Sequence record: MK250027.1
DNA: 64,000 nucleotides
Direction: 5' to 3' (one strand)
This document shows positions 2,457-59,607 of this stretch, piece by piece (the first letter of the stretch is position 1; every line of letters starts with the position of its first letter). A model generated the notes under the pieces. That model saw only the letters and a list, made by a program, of their open reading frames with translations. It was not told the DNA's origin and did not search any database. The translations under genes were made by a program, and so were the position numbers.

Positions 2457-3335
2457 TTACTGTTGTACTGTTGAAAGAACAGTAAATGATGTTTGATCAG
2501 TTGATTCAATTCTTACCTTTTGCTTTGAATCATTAGGTAATGTAATAATAATACTCTCTGCATCACCTTTAAGATTTACTGCTGTAAAGAAATTACTTCT
2601 GTAAATAGGTATTGCATTTTCTGCACCTGTACCATCTTTCAAGAAACCAAGCAAATAATCATAAGATTCATTTGTATCATCATACGCATAAAGTGCCCAT
2701 TTGCCTGTACCTTCATCAATCTTTGTATAGAACTTAATAATATCTTTCTTTGCATCTGTAACAAAAATAGAAGAAATATTAGTAAGATTCTTCAATACAT
2801 TCATTGAAATCTCAAATGACATAGGATTTGCAATAACATTAATTCTATCAAAGAAAAGTTCATCTGATACTTGTTCAAACTCAGATATATTGCAATCCTT
2901 TACCTTCATTGTATTTGTACGAGATTTAAGTCTAATAGACTGTGCATGGAACTCATCTCCTACATGTCCCTTATAAACATCAAAATCTACATTCAATTGA
3001 AAATCTGTATCCTTGAAAATATCGATAACGGAAATAAATCGTGGAAGAATCATAAAGATACCAATCTTAATTCTTACATTATATTTCTCATTCCATTCAT
3101 CAAGAGAATATGCAACATTATCATTATCTCTGATATTCAAAATTTCCAATCCAGCATTTTCAAAAGAAATCTTTGCATATTTAACTACAGTATGATCTGC
3201 AGTAAAACCCTTTGAAACAAAGCATTGTTCTTTCAAATCACATTCTATGAGAAGTGAACTTTGGATTTCCTTAAAGGCTTTCAACCATGTAGAAAATCCT
3301 GCAGTTGTTCCTTTATTCTTAAATACTAAATTCAT
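2457..3335 (-). CDS. Hypothetical protein, possibly sliding-clamp-like
   Basis: Clean 292-aa ORF; alternating alpha/beta pattern and size compatible with a PCNA/gp45-type clamp (weak). Confidence 0.6.
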   Translation of the reverse strand: MNLVFKNKGTTAGFSTWLKAFKEIQSSLLIECDLKEQCFVSKGFTADHTVVKYAKISFENAGLEILNIRDNDNVAYSLDEWNEKYNVRIKIGIFMILPRFISVIDIFKDTDFQLNVDFDVYKGHVGDEFHAQSIRLKSRTNTMKVKDCNISEFEQVSDELFFDRINVIANPMSFEISMNVLKNLTNISSIFVTDAKKDIIKFYTKIDEGTGKWALYAYDDTNESYDYLLGFLKDGTGAENAIPIYRSNFFTAVNLKGDAESIIITLPNDSKQKVRIESTDQTSFTVLSTVQQ

Positions 3336-13563: not shown

Positions 13564-14577
13564 TTACATAATATATTGTAAAAGCATCTATGTTTCCTCA
13601 TCAGCTTTTAATTTTGGATATGCAGCTCTAAGTATCTGTAATACACGTGTTTCTGTCATTCCATGTTCTTCTGCAACTTGCCATGTATTCTTTTCACCAC
13701 GTCCATTAATACCATAGCAATCACATACAATTTCACCATCTCTTTCACCAAGAACTCTCTTTACATTATCTTCAAGTTCTCTTTCAAGATCAGCGTTATT
13801 AAGATTACTATCAGGGTCTTTAAATGTCCTATTAGCTGTTACATCACCTAATGTTGTTTTAGAATCATCATCATCCCCGTATGATTTATCCAAACTATTT
13901 GCACGTGTATTTGCTTCCATTGTTTGTGCAAATGTTTCATATTTCAAATCTGGATGTTTCTTTACGAGAACATTATAAATATCATCAATATCAGGTTCAT
14001 AACCATTCTTATTATATAATTGATCCTTGATACGAGCGGCTTCACGAGCAATACTACCCATATTACGGGGAACTGCCATATGTCCACCTACCTCATCAAC
14101 AGCAGTCATAATTTCTCTACGAATATACCAAATAGCATAAGAAACAAAACGTACATCTTTACCTGGCAAACTTGGATCATATGTATCTGCTGCTTGCATA
14201 AGTCCTATATTTCCATATTGAATCATATCTTCCTTTGGTATATTAATATTTTTATACTTATTGACAACAGAAATAACAAATGGAAGATTTGCGGACACCA
14301 ACTTATTCTTTGCCTTTTCAATTTCTCTCTTATTATCAGAATGTTGAATAATATCAGCAAGTTTCACTTCATCTGCATGTGATAATTGTTTTTTCTTATT
14401 AATAGCATGTAAATATGCAATAGTAGACTTTGCTGTATTTTCATCCTGTGTAATAGCAAAATCATCATGCAAATCCATATGCATTCCATTATTAGCTTCA
14501 TTGAGTTTCTTTCTAATAGTCTTAGAAACATTTCTCATGATACTTTCATACAATGTCTTCTTTTCATTTAACTTCAT
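13564..14577 (-). CDS. RNA polymerase sigma-70 family factor with N-terminal LYESIM leader
   Basis: Region 2 LVSANLPFVISVVNKY..DMIQYGNIGLMQAADTYDP..RFVSYAIWYIR; region 4 HTH VAEEHGMTETRVLQI; the TAG at 13588 read through extends to TAA 13564. Confidence 0.92.
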
Positions 14578-16293: not shown

Positions 16294-16541
16294 AATTCTT
16301 TATATTTTTAATTGTTTATATTCTTATTTTATTAACAATACAAAGATACACATTATTTTTGATATAAAAAAGAAAACATAAAGAAATATCAATTTTTATA
16401 GTAAAAACAATTAAAATTCTATAGAAATCTTATTAAATTTTATAATATTTTTTAAACAAGTATAGATGTACTGTAAAAAGAAAAGTCTACCATGACTTAC
16501 ATCATAATAGACTTATAGTACATCTTTAAAAATAATATCTG

Positions 16542-16637
16542 TGGATATAGATGGACTCGAACCACCATGTATCTGCCCTAGAATTATGATACAAACTAAC
16601 ATCATATTAGTCGCGTTTACCATTTCGCCATATATCC
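16542..16637 (-). tRNA. Non-canonical type-II tRNA, apparent anticodon UGA (Ser) on a Leu-like body
   Basis: GGATATA/TATATCC acceptor stem, A73; D arm GCG-AAATGGTAAA-CGC; ACTAA/TTAGT stem with loop TATGATG (A33, U37); 28-nt variable arm; GGTGG-TTCGAGT-CCATC T arm. Confidence 0.7.
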
Positions 16638-16643
16638 ATATAG

Positions 16644-16716
16644 CAGGCCTGATGAGATTCGAACTCACAACAACATGATTAAAATTCGTGTGCTCTACCA
16701 ATTGAGCTACAGGCCC
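16644..16716 (-). tRNA. tRNA-Lys(UUU)
   Basis: GGGCCTG/CAGGCCT acceptor stem; GCTC/GAGC D stem; loop ATTTTAA; one mismatch in the anticodon stem; GTGAG-TTCGAAT-CTCAT T arm; CCA not encoded. Confidence 0.88.
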
Positions 16717-16760
16717 AAAGTTCTATTTTAAATTTCCACGCAATAGAACTCCGAAGATTT

Positions 16761-16930
16761 GTAGATCTGTGTTCATGGTACTTAATCTAATGCTTGTTTT
16801 TAATACTGACGTGTTAACCTCTTCACCAAATCCCCGATTAAATAATATGTAATAGAGGGGATTCATGGGTTCGAACCATGGATAATCAGTAAAATCATGA
16901 TATATCACGAATGACACCATGACAATCTAC
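16761..16930 (-). ncRNA. Circularly permuted tRNA-like RNA (3' half upstream of 5' half)
   Basis: Upstream piece ACTGA-TTATC-CATGG-TTCGAAC-CCATG-AATCCCC-T (16890-16856); downstream piece GGGGATT-TG-GTG..CAC-G-TCAGT (16835-16805); perfect 7-bp acceptor and 5-bp anticodon stems form only across the two pieces. Confidence 0.65.
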
Positions 16931-17132
16931 GTTAACTGTAATACTAAAGCTCTTGACTCAATGCTAACGCTAAAATCTAGGATTCTGTTTATGCTAAATG
17001 TAATCAAGCTAATGCTTTAGTCAATTTACATATGTTATATATGATATTATATTCAAAGTCTATTATTCATATCAAAAATATTTTTAAGAAATAAATATCA
17101 TAAATGAATCGATAACATTTATTATATAATAT

Positions 17133-23111: not shown

Positions 23112-24656
23112 TCAGAGTTCTTCCCATGTCAAAAGACCAGCAAGATATGTGTCATTTGCTTGAAGTTGATTTAATGCGGTATTTAAACCTGTATAGAATG
23201 TTTCATTAGCGACATCAACTGTTACTTCTGCTTCAACACCGTCCTTACTTGTTGTAAGTTTCAATGTATTGAACTGTTTGTTATCTGCTTTAGGAGCTTC
23301 AAGTGCAGCATCCTTTACATATGAAGCTTCAATAGCATTAACAGAAGCATCAGTCTTTTCAAGATGAGCACCAATTGATGTATCTTCTGCTTTAAGTTCG
23401 TCAAAAGTAGACTTAATTCCAAGAGAAGTATCAACATATGTTGTTACAGCATCTGCATCAAGTGATACAACACCATTCTCTACCTTAATATACTTACCAT
23501 CACCCTTGAATGTTTCAAAAATTTCTGTAAAATCAAGATAAACATCAGAATTTTTCGCAGATTCAGTTTTTGACGGTTTTGTATTAAGAACAAGGTGTAA
23601 ATATGAATGACCATATTTAATCTTAAATCCAAGACGTGCTTGTTCCCATGTACCATCATGATTCTCTGACCATGGAAGCATTGCTGCAGATGTTACTTCA
23701 TCACCGTAATTAACAGTTGCTGAATTACCCCATTGATCTGAGTCACTACCATATACAATTTCTGGACCTCCTTCTTTAACATACTTAAATGTACATACAT
23801 GTGCACCAGATACCAAGAAATCCTTAGCAATATTGATCTTATCACCAACAGGAGAAACTGTGCCATCAGGAGCAGTTTGCATTAATTGATATTCAGCTGC
23901 ATATGTTTTCTCGCCATCAGTTTGTTCCATCTGATCATCAGAAACTTTCTTAATTGCATATGTAGAAACTTTAAGTGCATCATCAACAACCTTTACTGTT
24001 GTATCATCAACTTTAACACCTACTGTATATGTCTGATAATCATTAGCACCCTTTGTAGGAGTTACTGTAATTGCACCATTTGCTGCTTCAGAAACAACAT
24101 CGCTCTTAAGATGAGTTTCAATACCGGATACCGAAGTATCCAAACGAGTAGTATCTTCAGTATGAAGTGCTTCCAAATCATCAATCTATTTCTGAAGATT
24201 AGATTGAGCTGCTTTAATCATTTCCTGAACAGTTGCAGTATCAATAATATCAAACTCTGTTGTCCATGTCTTCGTCTTTGTTTGATTATCAACAGGATCT
24301 GTTGCACTACCGAACCATTTAACCATTACCTTATCAGCAACTTTCTCTGTTGTAGATTCTACATATTTACCTGTTGATGGATCAAAATGTTTCTTTGCAA
24401 CCTCATTTGTTGTAATATCAAGGATCTTAGAAGATACAAGTTGATTACCAACAAATATCATACCGGAATCACCAGCAGCGTCATATACAAAACGTAATTT
24501 AGCATCAGAATCTGCAGCATCATAAATAGCAATCACCTTTGCTTCATCAAACGCGCCACTCAAAAAATGTACTTCCTTACCTGCAATAGTTGCATCAGCA
24601 ACCTAATCTGTTAACTTTGTTGCTTCACCAGCACCATAAACCATTTTATTTGTCAT
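23112..24656 (-). CDS. Fibre-like structural protein B (514 aa, 2 TAG)
   Basis: ATG 24656; ORFs 24186-24563 and 23112-24176 fuse; ends LTWEEL. Confidence 0.75.
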
Positions 24657-24708
24657 ATTAAATTTTTATAGATTTAATTTTAATATTTATTAATGTTTTA
24701 AAAAATTA

Positions 24709-57344: not shown

Positions 57345-59264
57345 ATGGAATATACGATAGAATCAATAAAACAAAATATAGTATGTTGGGTTGAAGATCA
57401 TTTAGGATTAGATTTTACATTTAGAAAATATTAGTTGGAATCTATAATGTTTATTATTAAATCTATTCTTAATGATGATAGGGAAACTTCAATTATCGAG
57501 GCTCCAACTGGTTCAGGTAAGTCACTTATCTGTATTATATCTGCAGGTGTACTTTCAACATATTATAAGAAATCATCATATATACTTTGTTCAGATCTTT
57601 TCCTTTGGCAACAATACGCGGATTTTATAGATAAGAAATCATTAAGAGAATTCGGATATATAAAAGGCGCAATAGGAAATTATACATGCTTTGTTAATAA
57701 ACAAGATTTAAGTTGTGGAAGGTGCAAGTTAGCGAAAGTTTCATATGGTCAATTAAAGGATAAGAATTGGAGAGAACGAAATATGTTTACATGCGTTGAG
57801 AGATGTAAATATATGCAAGATAGATTCAGAGCTGAACGTTCAAACGTTACACTTATGACATATCAACTTTGGCTTCATCATATGAATCTAGTTAATTCAA
57901 AAGCAGCTGGTTCACATCCATTTCCGAAGAGAGATGTAATATTTTGTGATGAGTGTCATAATATTCCTGATTTGGTTCAACAATTCTGTGCGCCAACATT
58001 AAGGGATCAATCTCATGTAAATAAAATAATGGATATTCTTAATTACGCAGAGGAAAACAATATTGAGATTAAAACTATATTAAAACATATAGATCCAGAA
58101 TTATATAAATATGATTATTATTTAAAGATATATGAGAAGAATAAGGATAATAGATATACAAACATGTTTGATAACTCTATTATTAAAGATAGGTTGGATA
58201 TTATATTTACAGGTCTTAATTTTTATCATGATAATGCTAAACAGATTTTAGACTTATTAAAAATGTTCCGAGATATTCTCTCTATTGTTTCTGTTGTGAA
58301 TGAATCAATGGAAGATGAAATTCAACATGAATCATTATTCAATACAAGGAATATGGATAAAGGATTAGAAACATTATCTAAGAGGTTAACATGGTTTCAA
58401 ACATTCGGAAATTCTTTTGAGGACTTTATGGAAGCTATAAAGAAATCAGGAATTGAATATATGTTAATGGAAGTTAATATCAATCCAGAAACAAGAGAAC
58501 GAATATTTCAGTTTAATTGTGCTAAAGAGGATTATCTTTGTAGTGAGTATCTTTTATCACATGCTAATAATAAAGTTTTACTATCAGCGACTGTTGGATC
58601 GCATCATGCTTTCGATGAGAATATAGGGATAAAGTATACAAAACAACATGAGTCTTTTTTCTCAAAGATTCCGTCTACATTTGATTTTACACATTCACCT
58701 ATATATTACATACCAAAATATAAAATGAATTATGCCAATAAACAACATGATTTTCCGTTTATTCAACAGATGTCATGTAAGATTATAAATGCACATATTA
58801 ATAACAGAGGTATAATTCATACAGGGTCATATGAGAATGCAAGATTCTTTTATAATGCATGTCCACGAGAAATTCAAAAAAGATTATTCTTATATGGAAC
58901 ACCAAAGCAAAAGGAAGAGATAATGCCTGATTTTAAGAAATCATTGAATGGCATATTAGTTGGTCCAACATTAACGGAAGGTATAGATTTACCGAATGAT
59001 TATTGTAGATTCATTATATTGATGAAAGTTCCATATCCTAATATAACAAGTAAGATAGTAAAGAAGAAATTAGAATTATTCCCTTTATGGTATAACAGTA
59101 CGACAAGTAATGTGATAATTCAGGCTATTGGTAGAGGCGTAAGAAATGAACATGATTATTGTACAACATATATATTGGATGGGTGTTTCGGTAATCTTTA
59201 TCAACAAACAAAAGATCAATATTCACCTGAATTACAAAACAGAATAAAAGTCATATATAGTTAA
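57345..59264 (+). CDS. DinG/XPD-like SF2 helicase (639 aa)
   Basis: Q-motif FRKY(TAG=Q)LESI; EAPTGSGKS; DECH; EGIDLP; QAIGRGVR. Confidence 0.92.
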
Positions 59265-59265
59265 T

Positions 59266-59607
59266 ATGTATAACCAAGATATATATTTAAAAAGTTCAGG
59301 AATATTGTTCGCTAAAGAATTTGAGAGAGTTGTTCATGGAGGTAGAGGAGATTATGTCGAATTTACACGTGAACAAATTATTCCAAAACTTTATTATAAA
59401 TTCGATGAAGAACATAATGAATTTGATATAAATAACTTTGAAAAATATAACGGATATTATTATCATTGGTTATATCCGTTATATGATACTGAAACAAAAA
59501 TATATTTTCAATTGAAAACAGTTAAATACGCAGATTATAAATTATATCATTTTTATGTAAGTCCTGAACTTTTAATAAATTTCAAAGATCCAGAAAGTTT
59601 ATTTTGA
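59266..59607 (+). CDS. Hypothetical protein
   Basis: RVVHGGRGDYVEF; ORF in operon. Confidence 0.75.
   Translation: MYNQDIYLKSSGILFAKEFERVVHGGRGDYVEFTREQIIPKLYYKFDEEHNEFDINNFEKYNGYYYHWLYPLYDTETKIYFQLKTVKYADYKLYHFYVSPELLINFKDPESLF

What the first reader, a model, noticed from the sequence alone, without database searches (positions are those of the whole stretch)
16761..16930. Circularly permuted tRNA-like gene in a phage tRNA cluster
Seen on the minus strand, co-oriented with the adjacent tRNAs: first a 3' half (ACTGA, 5-nt variable loop, perfect T arm, AATCCCC, U73, CTA), then a 17-nt spacer, then a 5' half (GGGGATT, 3-bp D stem with GG in the loop, TCAGT). The acceptor (7/7) and anticodon (5/5) stems pair only across the halves. 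The outer flanks also pair: 16761-16779 with 16916-16930, 15 bp in three helices. Known: permuted tRNAs occur in red/green algae and an archaeon, and two-piece tmRNAs have this gene order. This RNA has G3:C70 and U73 (no Ala identity) and no evident tag frame. Inference: either a permuted tRNA needing cleavage and ligation (37/38 joining would give anticodon UAA) or a two-piece tRNA mimic or decoy. I do not know of an example in a phage.
Basis: partly seen in the sequence, partly recalled or inferred. Interest (0 to 1): 0.85.

Follow-up and report, generated by a model that had tools for sequence, protein, structure and literature searches.

The report
Phage tRNA mimic with closed acceptor stem
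The "back-to-front tRNA" in this Lak megaphage is a real, conserved structured RNA, but it is most likely a non-decoding tRNA look-alike of the kind known from bacterial and phage Y RNAs (YrlA), not a permuted tRNA that is spliced into a working tRNA.

Summary
The window is Prevotella megaphage Lak-B8. A 5-bp "anticodon" stem and a 15-bp basal helix close the whole.

Eight distinct Lak variants keep 98% of pair cells paired. Fourteen pairs change on both sides, and these fall in the acceptor, T, anticodon-like and basal helices. The tRNA tertiary nucleotides are invariant. It is single copy per genome.

The would-be anticodon loop is not conserved (UAA, AUU, UAA, with A, U or C at position 37), so a decoding permuted tRNA is unlikely. 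There is no G3:U70 and no tag frame, so it is not a tmRNA.

The topology is that of YrlA Y RNAs. M. smegmatis YrlA, also with a 7-bp acceptor, is cut by RNase P and given CCA.

Lak genomes encode one Ro60-like protein (DUF2828). Its gene lies 143 kb from this RNA and has its own adjacent small RNA carrying an ACAGCAA motif, which this RNA lacks. Similar tRNA mimics lie near DUF2828 genes in FelixO1, AvadaKedavra, phiN3 and RSP15.

Verdict: a new variant of a known kind. Its partner and function are not shown.

The parts
16916..16930 (-). 5' strand of the basal (outer) helix: GUAGAU, UGU, CAUGGU
   Evidence: Pairs with 16779-16761. Pairs covary: CAUGGU/ACCAUG in B, CAUAGU/ACUAUG in A/C, CACAGU/ACUGUG in relatives X7 and X10, CAUAUU/AAUAUG in D type.
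16895..16910 (-). Small hairpin in the 5' internal loop (UCGUGA-UAUA-UCAUGA)
   Evidence: Kept in position in all Lak types, with a different stem sequence in D type (helix 3 is 97.6% paired, with no double change).
16886..16890 (-). Anticodon-stem-like helix, strand equivalent to tRNA positions 39-43 (ACUGA)
   Evidence: Pairs with 16809-16805. Three of 5 pairs change on both sides: ACUGA/UCAGU becomes AUAAA/UUUAU in D type.
16881..16885 (-). 5-nt variable loop ending in C48
   Evidence: C48 is invariant and can pair with the invariant G15 (Levitt pair). The other positions vary.
16864..16880 (-). T arm (CAUGG-UUCGAAC-CCAUG)
   Evidence: T54, psi55, C56, R57, A58 and G53:C61 are invariant. 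Loop positions 59-60 vary. Three stem pairs covary: CAUGG, ACGGG, ACAGG, AUAGG.
16856..16863 (-). Acceptor 3' strand AAUCCCC plus discriminator U73
   Evidence: 7/7 pairing with 16835-16829. Four pairs change on both sides across Lak types: GGGGAUU, GGGCGAU, GGGCAAU, GCGUGAU. U73 and the following C are the same in all types.
16836..16855 (-). Loop closing the acceptor stem (20 nt here, about 25-28 nt in the other types)
   Evidence: Variable in length and sequence, except for the first C after U73. This is the predicted site of RNase P and 3'-end processing; that is inference by analogy with M. smegmatis YrlA.
16829..16835 (-). Acceptor 5' strand GGGGAUU
   Evidence: See the acceptor 3' strand (helix 6: 98.2% paired).
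16810..16828 (-). U8, G9, D arm (GUG-AAGAGGUUAA-CAC) and G26
   Evidence: U8, A14, G15, G18, G19 and A21 are invariant. The only change is at a D-loop position that also varies in tRNAs. The 3-bp D stem with a 10-nt loop resembles class II tRNAs and the neighbouring tRNA at 16637-16542.
16805..16809 (-). Anticodon-stem-like helix, strand equivalent to tRNA positions 27-31 (UCAGU)
   Evidence: helix 4, 100% paired.
16780..16804 (-). 3' internal loop. The first 7-8 nt (the would-be anticodon loop) are variable. The conserved motif AAGCAUUAG follows at 16795-16787.
   Evidence: AAGCAUUA is invariant in all eight variants. The same 9-mer occurs in the upstream block at 17017-17009.
16761..16779 (-). 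3' strand of the basal helix (ACCAUG, A, ACA, CAG, AUCUAC)

Best explanation
This is a non-decoding tRNA mimic of the YrlA (Y RNA-like) architectural class.

**Transcription.** It is probably transcribed as part of a small non-coding RNA and tRNA operon. A sigma-70-like promoter consensus match lies at 17075-17046 and a terminator-like site at 16514-16483. Between them lie a conserved 95-nt hairpin RNA, this RNA, a second conserved hairpin, tRNA-Lys(UUU) and a class-II-like tRNA.

**Fold.** The RNA folds into a tRNA L-shape. Its acceptor stem is closed by a variable loop. Its anticodon stem continues, through an internal loop, into a 15-bp basal helix formed by the two ends.

**Shown.**
- The fold is under selection.
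- All tRNA tertiary nucleotides are kept.
- There is no conserved anticodon loop.

**Inferred, processing.** With a 7-bp acceptor stem stacked on a T arm and a conserved U73-C74, host RNase P probably cuts 5' of G1. The 3' side is then probably trimmed and completed to CCA. This would give a nicked, two-piece tRNA-like RNA, as shown experimentally for M. smegmatis YrlA.

**Inferred, function.** The tRNA-like body presents itself to a tRNA-binding factor. The basal stem and the conserved unpaired AAGCAUUAG motif bind a second factor, so the RNA acts as a tether or scaffold as Y RNAs do. The most obvious candidate partner is the single Ro60-like (DUF2828) protein that every Lak genome encodes. 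I put that particular link at about 0.3 only.
For: **Fold and selection.**
- Anatomy.
- Covariation in the acceptor (4 pairs), T (3), anticodon-like (3) and basal (4) helices.
- The tRNA core nucleotides are invariant, while positions 16/17, 59/60 and the loops vary as they do in tRNAs.
- ARAGORN accepts the re-permuted sequence as a tRNA.
- One copy per Lak genome.

**Match to YrlA.**
- Same order of elements as the Rfam YrlA consensus structure.
- Same as described by Chen et al. [quoted passage not shown]
- The first nucleotide after the discriminator is C in all Lak types, as in M. smegmatis, where only CA is added.

**A Ro60-like protein in Lak.**
- Lak-C1, A1 and B2 each encode one phrog_850 / PF11443 protein.
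- Its AlphaFold model has Ro60/TROVE structures as its 13 best PDB matches.

**Same pairing in other phages.** tRNA mimics of the same order lie on the same strand as homologous DUF2828 genes, 0.15 to 6.2 kb away.
- AvadaKedavra (Rfam YrlA E = 2e-5).
- FelixO1 (conserved and covarying in more than 240 phages).
- phiN3.
- RSP15, the last two with a 7-bp acceptor and a 16-17-nt loop.

**Expression.** Contigs from RNA libraries cover the upstream block, and one runs 62 nt into the C-type RNA. This is weak evidence because DNA carry-over is not excluded.
Against: - The Rfam YrlA model does not match it, even at E <= 10.
- The Ro60-site motif of YrlA (GNCGAAN0-1G) is absent.
- The ACAGCAA motif is absent too. 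I found that motif in the RNAs next to DUF2828 genes, including the small RNA directly upstream of Lak's own DUF2828 gene.
- The RNA lies 143 kb from the Ro-like gene, whereas known YrlA genes lie within 4 kb.
- No tRNA mimic was found within 10 kb of the closest non-Lak DUF2828 genes.
- Processing, CCA addition and any protein binding are untested.
- No read-level RNA data were available.
Confidence: 0.58

Rival explanations
1. Stand-alone decoy. The tRNA-like RNA works without the Ro-like protein. It sponges or diverts a host tRNA-targeting defence enzyme, or a tRNA-modifying or processing enzyme. It is carried next to a replacement tRNA-Lys(UUU).
For: - It lacks the ACAGCAA motif that marks the RNAs next to DUF2828 genes, while Lak's Ro-like gene has its own adjacent ACAGCAA RNA.
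- It sits in an operon with tRNA-Lys(UUU).
- From general knowledge rather than a test here: tRNA-Lys(UUU) is a frequent target of host anticodon nucleases such as PrrC (cf. PMC2610378).
Against: - It has no anticodon loop, so it cannot mimic the usual target of anticodon nucleases.
- No defence or anti-defence gene was recognised beside it.
- There is no experimental precedent for such a decoy.
Confidence: 0.2
2. Processing signal. The tRNA-shaped element exists mainly so that RNase P and 3'-end enzymes cut the polycistronic transcript. These cuts would release the ultra-conserved upstream 95-nt hairpin RNA, the downstream hairpin and the tRNAs (as mascRNA does for MALAT1).
For: - It lies between an ultra-conserved hairpin RNA (17029-16935) and a conserved hairpin plus two tRNAs, in what looks like one operon.
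- RNA-library contigs start at 17029, and one ends at 16937, close to the start of the element.
Against: - RNase P would cut inside the element at G1 (16835), not at its borders.
- Selection also maintains the basal helix, the internal-loop motif and the D arm, which a mere cleavage signal does not need.
Confidence: 0.1
3. True circularly permuted tRNA gene. The flanks are cut and the halves are ligated at the anticodon loop, possibly through a circular intermediate. The acceptor loop is removed and CCA is added, giving a decoding tRNA (UAA anticodon in Lak-B).
For: - The re-permuted B8 sequence is called tRNA-Leu(UAA) by ARAGORN.
- Lak tRNAs are reported to contain introns, so some splicing route may exist.
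- One RNA-library contig shows a 'goes back 487' joint in this operon.
Against: - The would-be anticodon loop is not conserved: the anticodon is UAA, AUU or UAA, and position 37 is A, U or C. A/C types also carry an indel there.
- By inspection I saw no conserved bulge-helix-bulge. The flanks form a 15-bp covarying helix with a 25-nt internal loop on each side.
- Bacterial tRNA-Leu is expected to have a long variable arm and A73 (general knowledge); this RNA has a 5-nt variable loop and U73.
- The joint links a different tRNA's 3' end to the upstream block, not the two halves.
Confidence: 0.05
4. Two-piece (permuted) tmRNA or a miniature relative of it.
For: - The gene order (T arm and 3' acceptor strand first, 5' acceptor strand second) is that of two-piece tmRNA genes.
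- In the 3' internal loop GCA-UUA-NNU-UAA can be read as a 3-codon frame in all types.
Against: - ARAGORN, which looks for tmRNA genes, reports none.
- The pair is G3:C70, not G3:U70, in every variant.
- I identified no pseudoknots.
- A 3-residue tag would be without precedent.
- The same AAGCAUUAG word also occurs in the upstream block, so it looks like a binding motif rather than a codon string.
Confidence: 0.02
5. Remnant of two tandem tRNA genes that are decaying (3' half of one, 5' half of the next), with no function as a unit.
For: - Tandem duplication is the likely origin. The 5' half resembles the neighbouring class-II-like tRNA (17 of 22 positions in the D-arm region).
Against: - Compensatory changes occur between the two halves in the acceptor and anticodon-like stems and in the flanking helix.
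- The tertiary nucleotides are fully conserved across four Lak lineages.
Confidence: 0.01

Closest known systems
YrlA (Y RNA-like A; Rfam RF02553), especially M. smegmatis YrlA
   Same: - Order of elements: basal stem, inner stem, T arm, closed acceptor stem-loop, D arm, back to the stems.
- tRNA tertiary nucleotides are kept, including the G15:C48 Levitt pair.
- In M. smegmatis the acceptor stem is 7 bp, is cut by RNase P and is completed to CCA, giving two pieces.
- Phage examples exist.
   Different: - No GNCGAAN0-1G motif.
- Not next to a Ro60 gene (143 kb away).
- The Lak Ro-like protein is a DUF2828-type distant relative, not an Rsr equivalog (NF041674 gives no hit).
- A 5-nt variable loop instead of a V stem-loop.
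- A 20-28-nt acceptor loop.
- A class-II-like 3-bp D stem.
- The Rfam model does not score it.
tRNA mimics next to DUF2828-type Ro-like genes in other phages: FelixO1 family, Mycobacterium phage AvadaKedavra, Sinorhizobium phiN3, Ralstonia RSP15 (found here; I found no description of them)
   Same: - T arm, closed acceptor, D arm on a long basal stem.
- Embedded in or beside tRNA clusters.
- phiN3 and RSP15 copies also have a 7-bp acceptor with a 16-17-nt loop, and RSP15 has a 3-bp class-II-like D stem.
- The genome encodes one DUF2828 protein.
   Different: - Those RNAs carry ACAGCAA, or a one-base variant of it (CAGCAA, CCGCAA), unpaired just after the 5' strand of the basal stem.
- They lie 0.15-6.2 kb from the gene on the same strand.
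- The Lak RNA has neither feature. In Lak the ACAGCAA RNA is a separate small RNA upstream of the gene.
Circularly permuted tRNA genes of Cyanidioschyzon merolae and other algae, and of an archaeon
   Same: The 3' half lies upstream of the 5' half on one strand, with a short linker between the acceptor strands.
   Different: Those mature into decoding tRNAs through a bulge-helix-bulge cut and a circular intermediate, and they keep a normal anticodon loop. Here the anticodon-loop equivalent is not conserved and I saw no such motif. The properties of the algal genes are from general knowledge and were not tested here.
Two-piece tmRNA
   Same: Permuted gene order of the tRNA-like domain, with processing at the acceptor ends into two base-paired pieces.
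   Different: No G3:U70, no tag reading frame of plausible length, no pseudoknots identified, and no ARAGORN call.

Membership tests
YrlA / bacterial and phage Y RNA | tRNA-like domain in the order T arm, closed acceptor stem-loop, D arm, with tRNA tertiary-interaction nucleotides, closed by stems made from the RNA's two ends | tested here: met
   (consensus structure of RF02553). Definition from PMC4201824.
YrlA / bacterial and phage Y RNA | GNCGAAN0-1G (CGAA) motif near the 5' end, the presumed Ro60 site | tested here: not met
   No such motif lies in the 5' strand or loop in any Lak type. The only CGAA is in the T loop. D type has AUCGAAU in the small hairpin, but this is not conserved.
YrlA / bacterial and phage Y RNA | Encoded within about 4 kb of a Ro60 (TROVE) gene, on the same strand | tested here: not met
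   The only Ro60-like gene of Lak-B2 is at 58254-59585 and the RNA is at 202635-202812. They share a strand but are 143 kb apart.
YrlA / bacterial and phage Y RNA | Reaches the Rfam RF02553 gathering score | tested here: not met
   No match to the element at E <= 10. A 19-bit match nearby covers the downstream hairpin and tRNA-Lys.
YrlA / bacterial and phage Y RNA | Bound by the Ro60 orthologue | not testable with these tools
   Needs a pull-down or EMSA with the Lak DUF2828 protein.
   Absent from 16930-16761 in all Lak types. Present 141-165 nt upstream of Lak's DUF2828 gene in a separate RNA.
Circularly permuted tRNA gene (decoding) | 3' half upstream of the 5' half, with acceptor and anticodon stems formed only between the halves | tested here: met
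Circularly permuted tRNA gene (decoding) | A conserved 7-nt anticodon loop (U33, purine 37, fixed anticodon) is restored on joining | tested here: not met
   The loop equivalents are AUUAAAA, AUAUUUA and UUUAACA in the B, A/C and D types.
Circularly permuted tRNA gene (decoding) | Bulge-helix-bulge motif at the junction and a splicing endonuclease and ligase | tested here: inconclusive
   No conserved 3-4-3 motif was seen by inspection of the flanks. The Lak genome was not searched for an endonuclease or an RNA ligase.
Two-piece tmRNA | G3:U70 alanine identity pair | tested here: not met
   G3:C70 in seven of eight variants and a U:C mismatch in one (columns 80/113).
Two-piece tmRNA | Tag reading frame with a resume codon, and pseudoknots | tested here: not met
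   ARAGORN finds no tmRNA. Only a 3-codon GCA-UUA-NNU-UAA string exists.

The most novel reading that the evidence does not exclude
Lak megaphages have split the two modules of a Y RNA into separate molecules.
- One is a small ACAGCAA RNA next to the Ro60-like gene.
- The other is a free-standing tRNA body in a tRNA operon. [quoted passage not shown]

That two-piece RNA would carry G1:C72, G3:C70 and U73. These resemble the glycine acceptor identity set (from general knowledge, not tested here). It might therefore be aminoacylated, or used as bait for enzymes that act on tRNA 3' ends.
Probability: 0.12. Interest if true: 0.8.

Novelty: new variant of a known kind. Interest (0 to 1): 0.5.

Why it matters
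tRNA-mimic Y RNAs are known, but what their tRNA-like half binds is an open question. This case helps in three ways.

- The tRNA-like half occurs on its own, under strong structural selection, in the largest gut phages. It is separated from the Ro-type binding site, so the two functions could be tested separately.
- The work links a very common phage protein family (DUF2828, 607 phage records, including the model phage FelixO1) to Ro60 by fold.
- It also links that family to unannotated small RNAs, some of them tRNA mimics, inside phage tRNA clusters. This gives cultivable systems (FelixO1 with Salmonella, mycobacteriophages) in which the biology can be tested.

It also cautions that "permuted tRNA" calls in phage tRNA clusters may be Y-RNA-like mimics.

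Tried and rejected
- **Rfam.** At gathering and at E <= 10 no family matches the element. snoU43 (E = 8) and a partial tRNA hit (E = 5.6) are noise.
- **ARAGORN.** On the native sequence it finds only tRNA-Lys.
- **MFE fold.** The single-sequence fold is not exceptional (z = -1.7). The support comes from comparison between variants, not from energy.
- **NF041674 (Rsr equivalog).** No hit in Lak. The Ro-like protein was found through phrog_850.
- **PDB sequence search.** The search with the Lak protein was blank. Only the fold search gave Ro60.
- **Near Lak's Ro-like gene.** No Rfam hit, no tRNA and no tRNA mimic.
- **Three metagenomic phages with the closest DUF2828 relatives (L049, L050, L052).** No tRNA mimic within 10 kb.
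- **Campylobacter PC14, Xanthomonas XbC2, Bacillus Thrax2.** My strict finder gave no convincing tRNA mimic. Hits in tRNA clusters with 6/7 acceptor pairs and long gaps are probably neighbouring tRNAs, the 'dimeric tRNA' artefact that Chen et al. warn of.
- **Neighbouring proteins.** They gave no functional lead: a sigma factor, a protein with an endolysin-like domain, and unknowns.
- **Reads.** Only Logan contigs were available, so no RNA ends, strand or processing could be read.
- **Tag frame.** Reading the conserved loop motif as a mini tag frame was considered and dropped.
- **AAGCAUUAG versus ACAGCAA.** A resemblance was noted, but it is too weak to claim.
- **Literature.** I found no mention of this RNA in the two Lak papers read or in the other literature searches.
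Full report
**Where the window comes from.** The stretch 16400-17100 is 100% identical to Prevotella phage Lak-B8 (MK250027.1, 551,627 bp). It is 98.6-99.7% identical to the other baboon Lak-B genomes, and about 80% identical to the human Lak-A1, A2 and C1 genomes. Lak phages read TAG as glutamine (code 15; Devoto et al. 2019). Long frames around the locus open only under that code.

**The observation.** On the minus strand the element runs from 16930 to 16761.
- It begins with a 15-nt strand of a basal helix, a small hairpin, then ACUGA.
- A 5-nt variable loop ending in C follows, then a perfect T arm with a UUCGAAC loop.
- Next come AAUCCCC, U73, and a 20-nt loop that starts CUA.
- Then GGGGAUU, U8 G9, and a 3-bp D stem with a 10-nt loop containing GG.
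- It ends with G26, UCAGU, a 25-nt unpaired stretch, and the partner strand of the basal helix.

ARAGORN and Rfam do not call it. If the two halves are swapped in silico, ARAGORN calls a standard 76-nt tRNA. A purpose-written scan for 'T arm, closed acceptor hairpin, D arm' finds only this site in the window. On shuffled DNA it finds 0.14 sites per 100 kb, and it recovers the known YrlA of mycobacteriophage Bxz1 as a positive control.

**Is it selected?** I collected eight distinct versions from Lak-B, A, C and a fourth lineage ('D type'; IMG/VR and ENA contigs of up to 554 kb).

The helices change by compensation.

| Helix | Versions seen |
|---|---|
| Acceptor | GGGGAUU/AAUCCCC, GGGCGAU/AUUGCCC, GGGCAAU/AUUGCCC, GCGUGAU/AUCACGC |
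| T stem | CAUGG, ACGGG, ACAGG, AUAGG, each with matching partners |
| Anticodon-like stem | ACUGA/UCAGU, AUAAA/UUUAU |
| Basal helix | CAUGGU/ACCAUG, CAUAGU/ACUAUG, CAUAUU/AAUAUG; also CACAGU/ACUGUG in two further relatives seen only as laid contigs |

On a covariance-model alignment, 98.4% of 313 pair cells are standard pairs. Fourteen of 41 pairs change on both sides. No shuffle in 500 reaches the observed values on four of the five measures (for further pair types 155 of 500 do). Sliding the partners gives at most 3 such pairs. That alignment is fitted to the model, but the same changes are plain in MAFFT alignments.

By contrast U8, A14, G15, G18, G19, A21, C48, T54-A58 and G53:C61 never change. 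The positions that do change (D loop 16/17, T loop 59/60, the variable loop, the acceptor loop) are those that vary among real tRNAs. Indels of 1, 6 and 7 nt rule out the overlapping 65-codon frame at 16920-16723. The model finds one copy per Lak genome. So this is a real structured RNA with a tRNA body, not two decaying tRNA genes.

**Not a decoding tRNA, not a tmRNA.** The 7 nt that would become the anticodon loop read as follows:

| Lak type | Loop equivalent | Anticodon | Position 37 |
|---|---|---|---|
| B | AUUAAAA | UAA | A |
| A/C | AUAUUUA | AUU | U |
| D | UUUAACA | UAA | C |

A/C types also have an indel there. By inspection I saw no conserved bulge-helix-bulge. Instead the flanks form a long covarying helix with 25-nt internal loops. 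The variable loop is 5 nt and the discriminator is U, which does not fit bacterial tRNA-Leu (general knowledge). For tmRNA, the pair is G3:C70 and there is no ARAGORN call. The only 'frame' is GCA-UUA-NNU-UAA.

**What it resembles.** The Rfam consensus structure for YrlA (RF02553) has exactly this order: outer stems, T arm, closed stem-loop, D arm, return strands.
- Chen et al. 2014 describe YrlA RNAs in more than 250 bacteria and in phages as tRNA mimics with the tRNA tertiary pairs.
- The M. smegmatis RNA is the only one they studied with a 7-bp acceptor stem. It is cut by RNase P at the expected site and gains CA to make CCA, so it exists as two pieces.
- The crystal structure confirms close tRNA mimicry.
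- Phage Ro60 with Y-like RNAs has since been studied in Thermus phage phiLo.

The Lak RNA shares the 7-bp acceptor. In all lineages it has U73 followed by C, so only CA would be needed. I therefore infer, but have not shown, the same processing by host RNase P and CCA-adding enzyme.

**Is there a Ro60 in Lak?** Bxz1 gp220 (Ro) identifies phrog_850 and NF041674.
- phrog_850 finds one gene of about 460 codons in each of Lak-C1, A1 and B2 (E = 1e-40 to 1e-44). NF041674 finds nothing.
- The protein carries Pfam DUF2828 and DUF7788.
- Its AlphaFold model (pLDDT 84) has Ro60/TROVE structures as its 13 best PDB matches. The top ones are the phiLo phage Ro60 (TM about 0.5), then Xenopus and human Ro60 and Deinococcus Rsr.
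- So Lak encodes a distant Ro60-like ring protein with a vWA domain. Its gene is 143 kb from the RNA, on the same strand.

**The wider pattern, and the problem it raises.** Homologues of the Lak protein occur in 607 phage records.
- In FelixO1, Ralstonia RSP15, Bacillus Thrax2 and Campylobacter PC14 the gene lies in or beside the tRNA cluster.
- tRNA mimics of the same order lie on the same strand near the gene:
  - AvadaKedavra, 150 nt downstream, Rfam YrlA 39.8 bits, E = 2e-5.
  - FelixO1, 1.1 kb downstream in an unannotated gap. It is conserved in more than 240 Felix-like phages, and its acceptor hairpin covaries.
  - phiN3, two finder hits 2.5 and 6.2 kb upstream, plus a possible third at 1.4 kb seen only as ACAGCAA followed by a T-arm-like sequence.
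  - RSP15, about 1 kb downstream, with a 7-bp acceptor, a 17-nt loop and a class-II-like D arm as in Lak.
- These RNAs, and further small stem-loop RNAs beside the genes, carry an unpaired ACAGCAA, or a one-base variant of it, just after the 5' strand of the basal stem. Its density is 0.62 per kb within 1.5 kb of the gene, against 0.14 per kb elsewhere in the same loci.
- Lak has such an RNA 141-165 nt upstream of its DUF2828 gene. The motif and its stem are conserved between lineages.
- The tRNA mimic of the window has no ACAGCAA. Its conserved unpaired word is AAGCAUUAG (16795-16787), which is repeated in the upstream block (17017-17009).

So in Lak the presumed Ro-site RNA and the tRNA-like RNA are separate molecules. 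This weakens, though it does not exclude, the idea that the mimic binds the Ro-like protein.

**Context.** The element sits in a compact unit on the minus strand.

| Feature | Coordinates | Notes |
|---|---|---|
| Promoter-like site | 17075-17046 | 11 of 12 consensus matches |
| 95-nt hairpin RNA ('block') | 17029-16935 | 97-100% identical in all lineages |
| tRNA mimic | 16930-16761 | this finding |
| Hairpin | 16750-16719 | covarying stem, invariant 14-nt loop |
| tRNA-Lys(UUU) | 16716-16643 | |
| Class-II-like tRNA | 16637-16542 | |
| Terminator-like site | 16514-16483 | |

Flanking proteins give no lead. Contigs from two RNA-seq libraries cover the block, starting exactly at 17029. One runs 62 nt into a C-type mimic. 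Another joins the 3' end of a related class-II-like tRNA directly to 17029. These are contigs, not reads, and DNA carry-over is possible. They show neither ends nor processing.

**Conclusion.** What is shown is a conserved, single-copy RNA with a tRNA body, a closed acceptor stem and an open, extended anticodon end, without a conserved anticodon. The best reading is a YrlA-like tRNA mimic that host tRNA enzymes probably nick and cap, acting as a protein tether or bait. Its partner is unknown: the Ro60-like protein is a candidate at about 0.3, and a stand-alone decoy is the main rival. It fails several YrlA membership criteria (motif, linkage, Rfam score). I therefore file it as a new variant that works like YrlA, not as a proven Y RNA.

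Noticed in passing
window 16935-17029 (minus strand): - A 95-nt long hairpin ('block') lies directly upstream of the tRNA mimic.
- It is 97-100% identical in all Lak lineages, while the neighbouring helices covary freely.
- It is single copy per genome and matches no Rfam family.
- It holds UUAGC repeats and the word AAGCAUUAG, which recurs in the mimic's 3' loop.
- RNA-library contigs of two studies start to match exactly at 17029.
- It may be a separate stable RNA, comparable to YrlB.
   Followed up: partly
window 16543-16605 joined to 17029-16937 (run X1): One 171-nt contig of a gut RNA-seq run reads the 3' part of a related class-II-like tRNA. That part ends at the last acceptor-stem base. 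It is joined directly to G17029 of the block ('goes back 487'). No DNA contig of any Lak relative I fetched has this order. It could be a tandem duplication in an unseen relative, a ligated or circular RNA, or a chimera.
   Followed up: no
window 16719-16750 (minus strand): A hairpin between the mimic and tRNA-Lys. The 9-bp stem covaries (AGUUCUAUU, GGUCUUAUU and GGUUUUAUU with their partners) and the 14-nt loop GCGUGGAAAUUUAA is invariant. The weak Rfam YrlA match (19 bits) covers this hairpin plus the tRNA-Lys 5' part and is not significant.
   Followed up: partly
window 16542-16637 (minus strand): A class-II-like tRNA is found by Rfam (45 bits) but not by ARAGORN. It has a 27-nt variable arm and an odd anticodon loop, UAUGAUG (A at position 33, U at 37). 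Its D arm is the closest match to that of the mimic's 5' half. Lak-C1 has an insertion of about 230 nt between tRNA-Lys and this tRNA.
   Followed up: partly
L015 1465-2850 (Lak-B2 58254-59585), outside the window: Each Lak genome searched (C1, A1, B2) encodes one DUF2828 + DUF7788 protein. Its predicted fold matches Ro60/TROVE plus vWA, with the phiLo phage Ro60 as the best match. The family is in 607 phage records, often annotated only as 'RNA-binding protein' or hypothetical.
   Followed up: yes
L015 about 2930-3010 (gene-sense 141 nt upstream of the Lak-B2 DUF2828 gene); L016 and L017 likewise: A small stem-loop RNA candidate with the conserved sequence AUGAGAGUCAA(U/A)ACAGCAAA and a matching 3' strand GACUCU. 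It is probably the Y-like RNA of the Lak Ro-like protein.
   Followed up: partly
L053 21455-22256 (FelixO1 NC_005282 about 23880-24682); L054 6470-6700; L055 7537-7615; L060 7484-7872; L056 1787-1841, 5461-5525, about 6611; L059 10035-10130: - An ACAGCAA motif follows the 5' strand of a stem in unannotated gaps beside DUF2828 genes, in phages of Salmonella, Mycobacterium, Campylobacter, Bacillus, Sinorhizobium and Ralstonia.
- Several copies carry a YrlA-like tRNA domain.
- FelixO1 has four such RNAs among its tRNAs.
- None of the searches I ran turned up a description of them; I did not search for FelixO1 by name.
   Followed up: partly
L057 6234-9455 and 13265-14380 (Xanthomonas phage XbC2): The DUF2828 gene lies 440 nt downstream of an annotated RNA ligase gene and about 4 kb from a tRNA nucleotidyltransferase / cyclic phosphodiesterase gene. 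This is an RNA-repair setting, like the rsr-rtcB operons of bacteria.
   Followed up: no
L049 13331-13785: A match to the group I intron model below the gathering score (41 bits, E = 3e-7), in an 850-nt gap 2 kb downstream of the DUF2828 gene of a 100-kb metagenomic phage contig.
   Followed up: no
window 13564-14577 (minus strand): A sigma-factor-like gene (phrog_351, E = 2e-42) lies 2 kb downstream of the RNA operon. The long frames on either side of the locus contain 1-15 in-frame TAG codons, in line with code 15.
   Followed up: no
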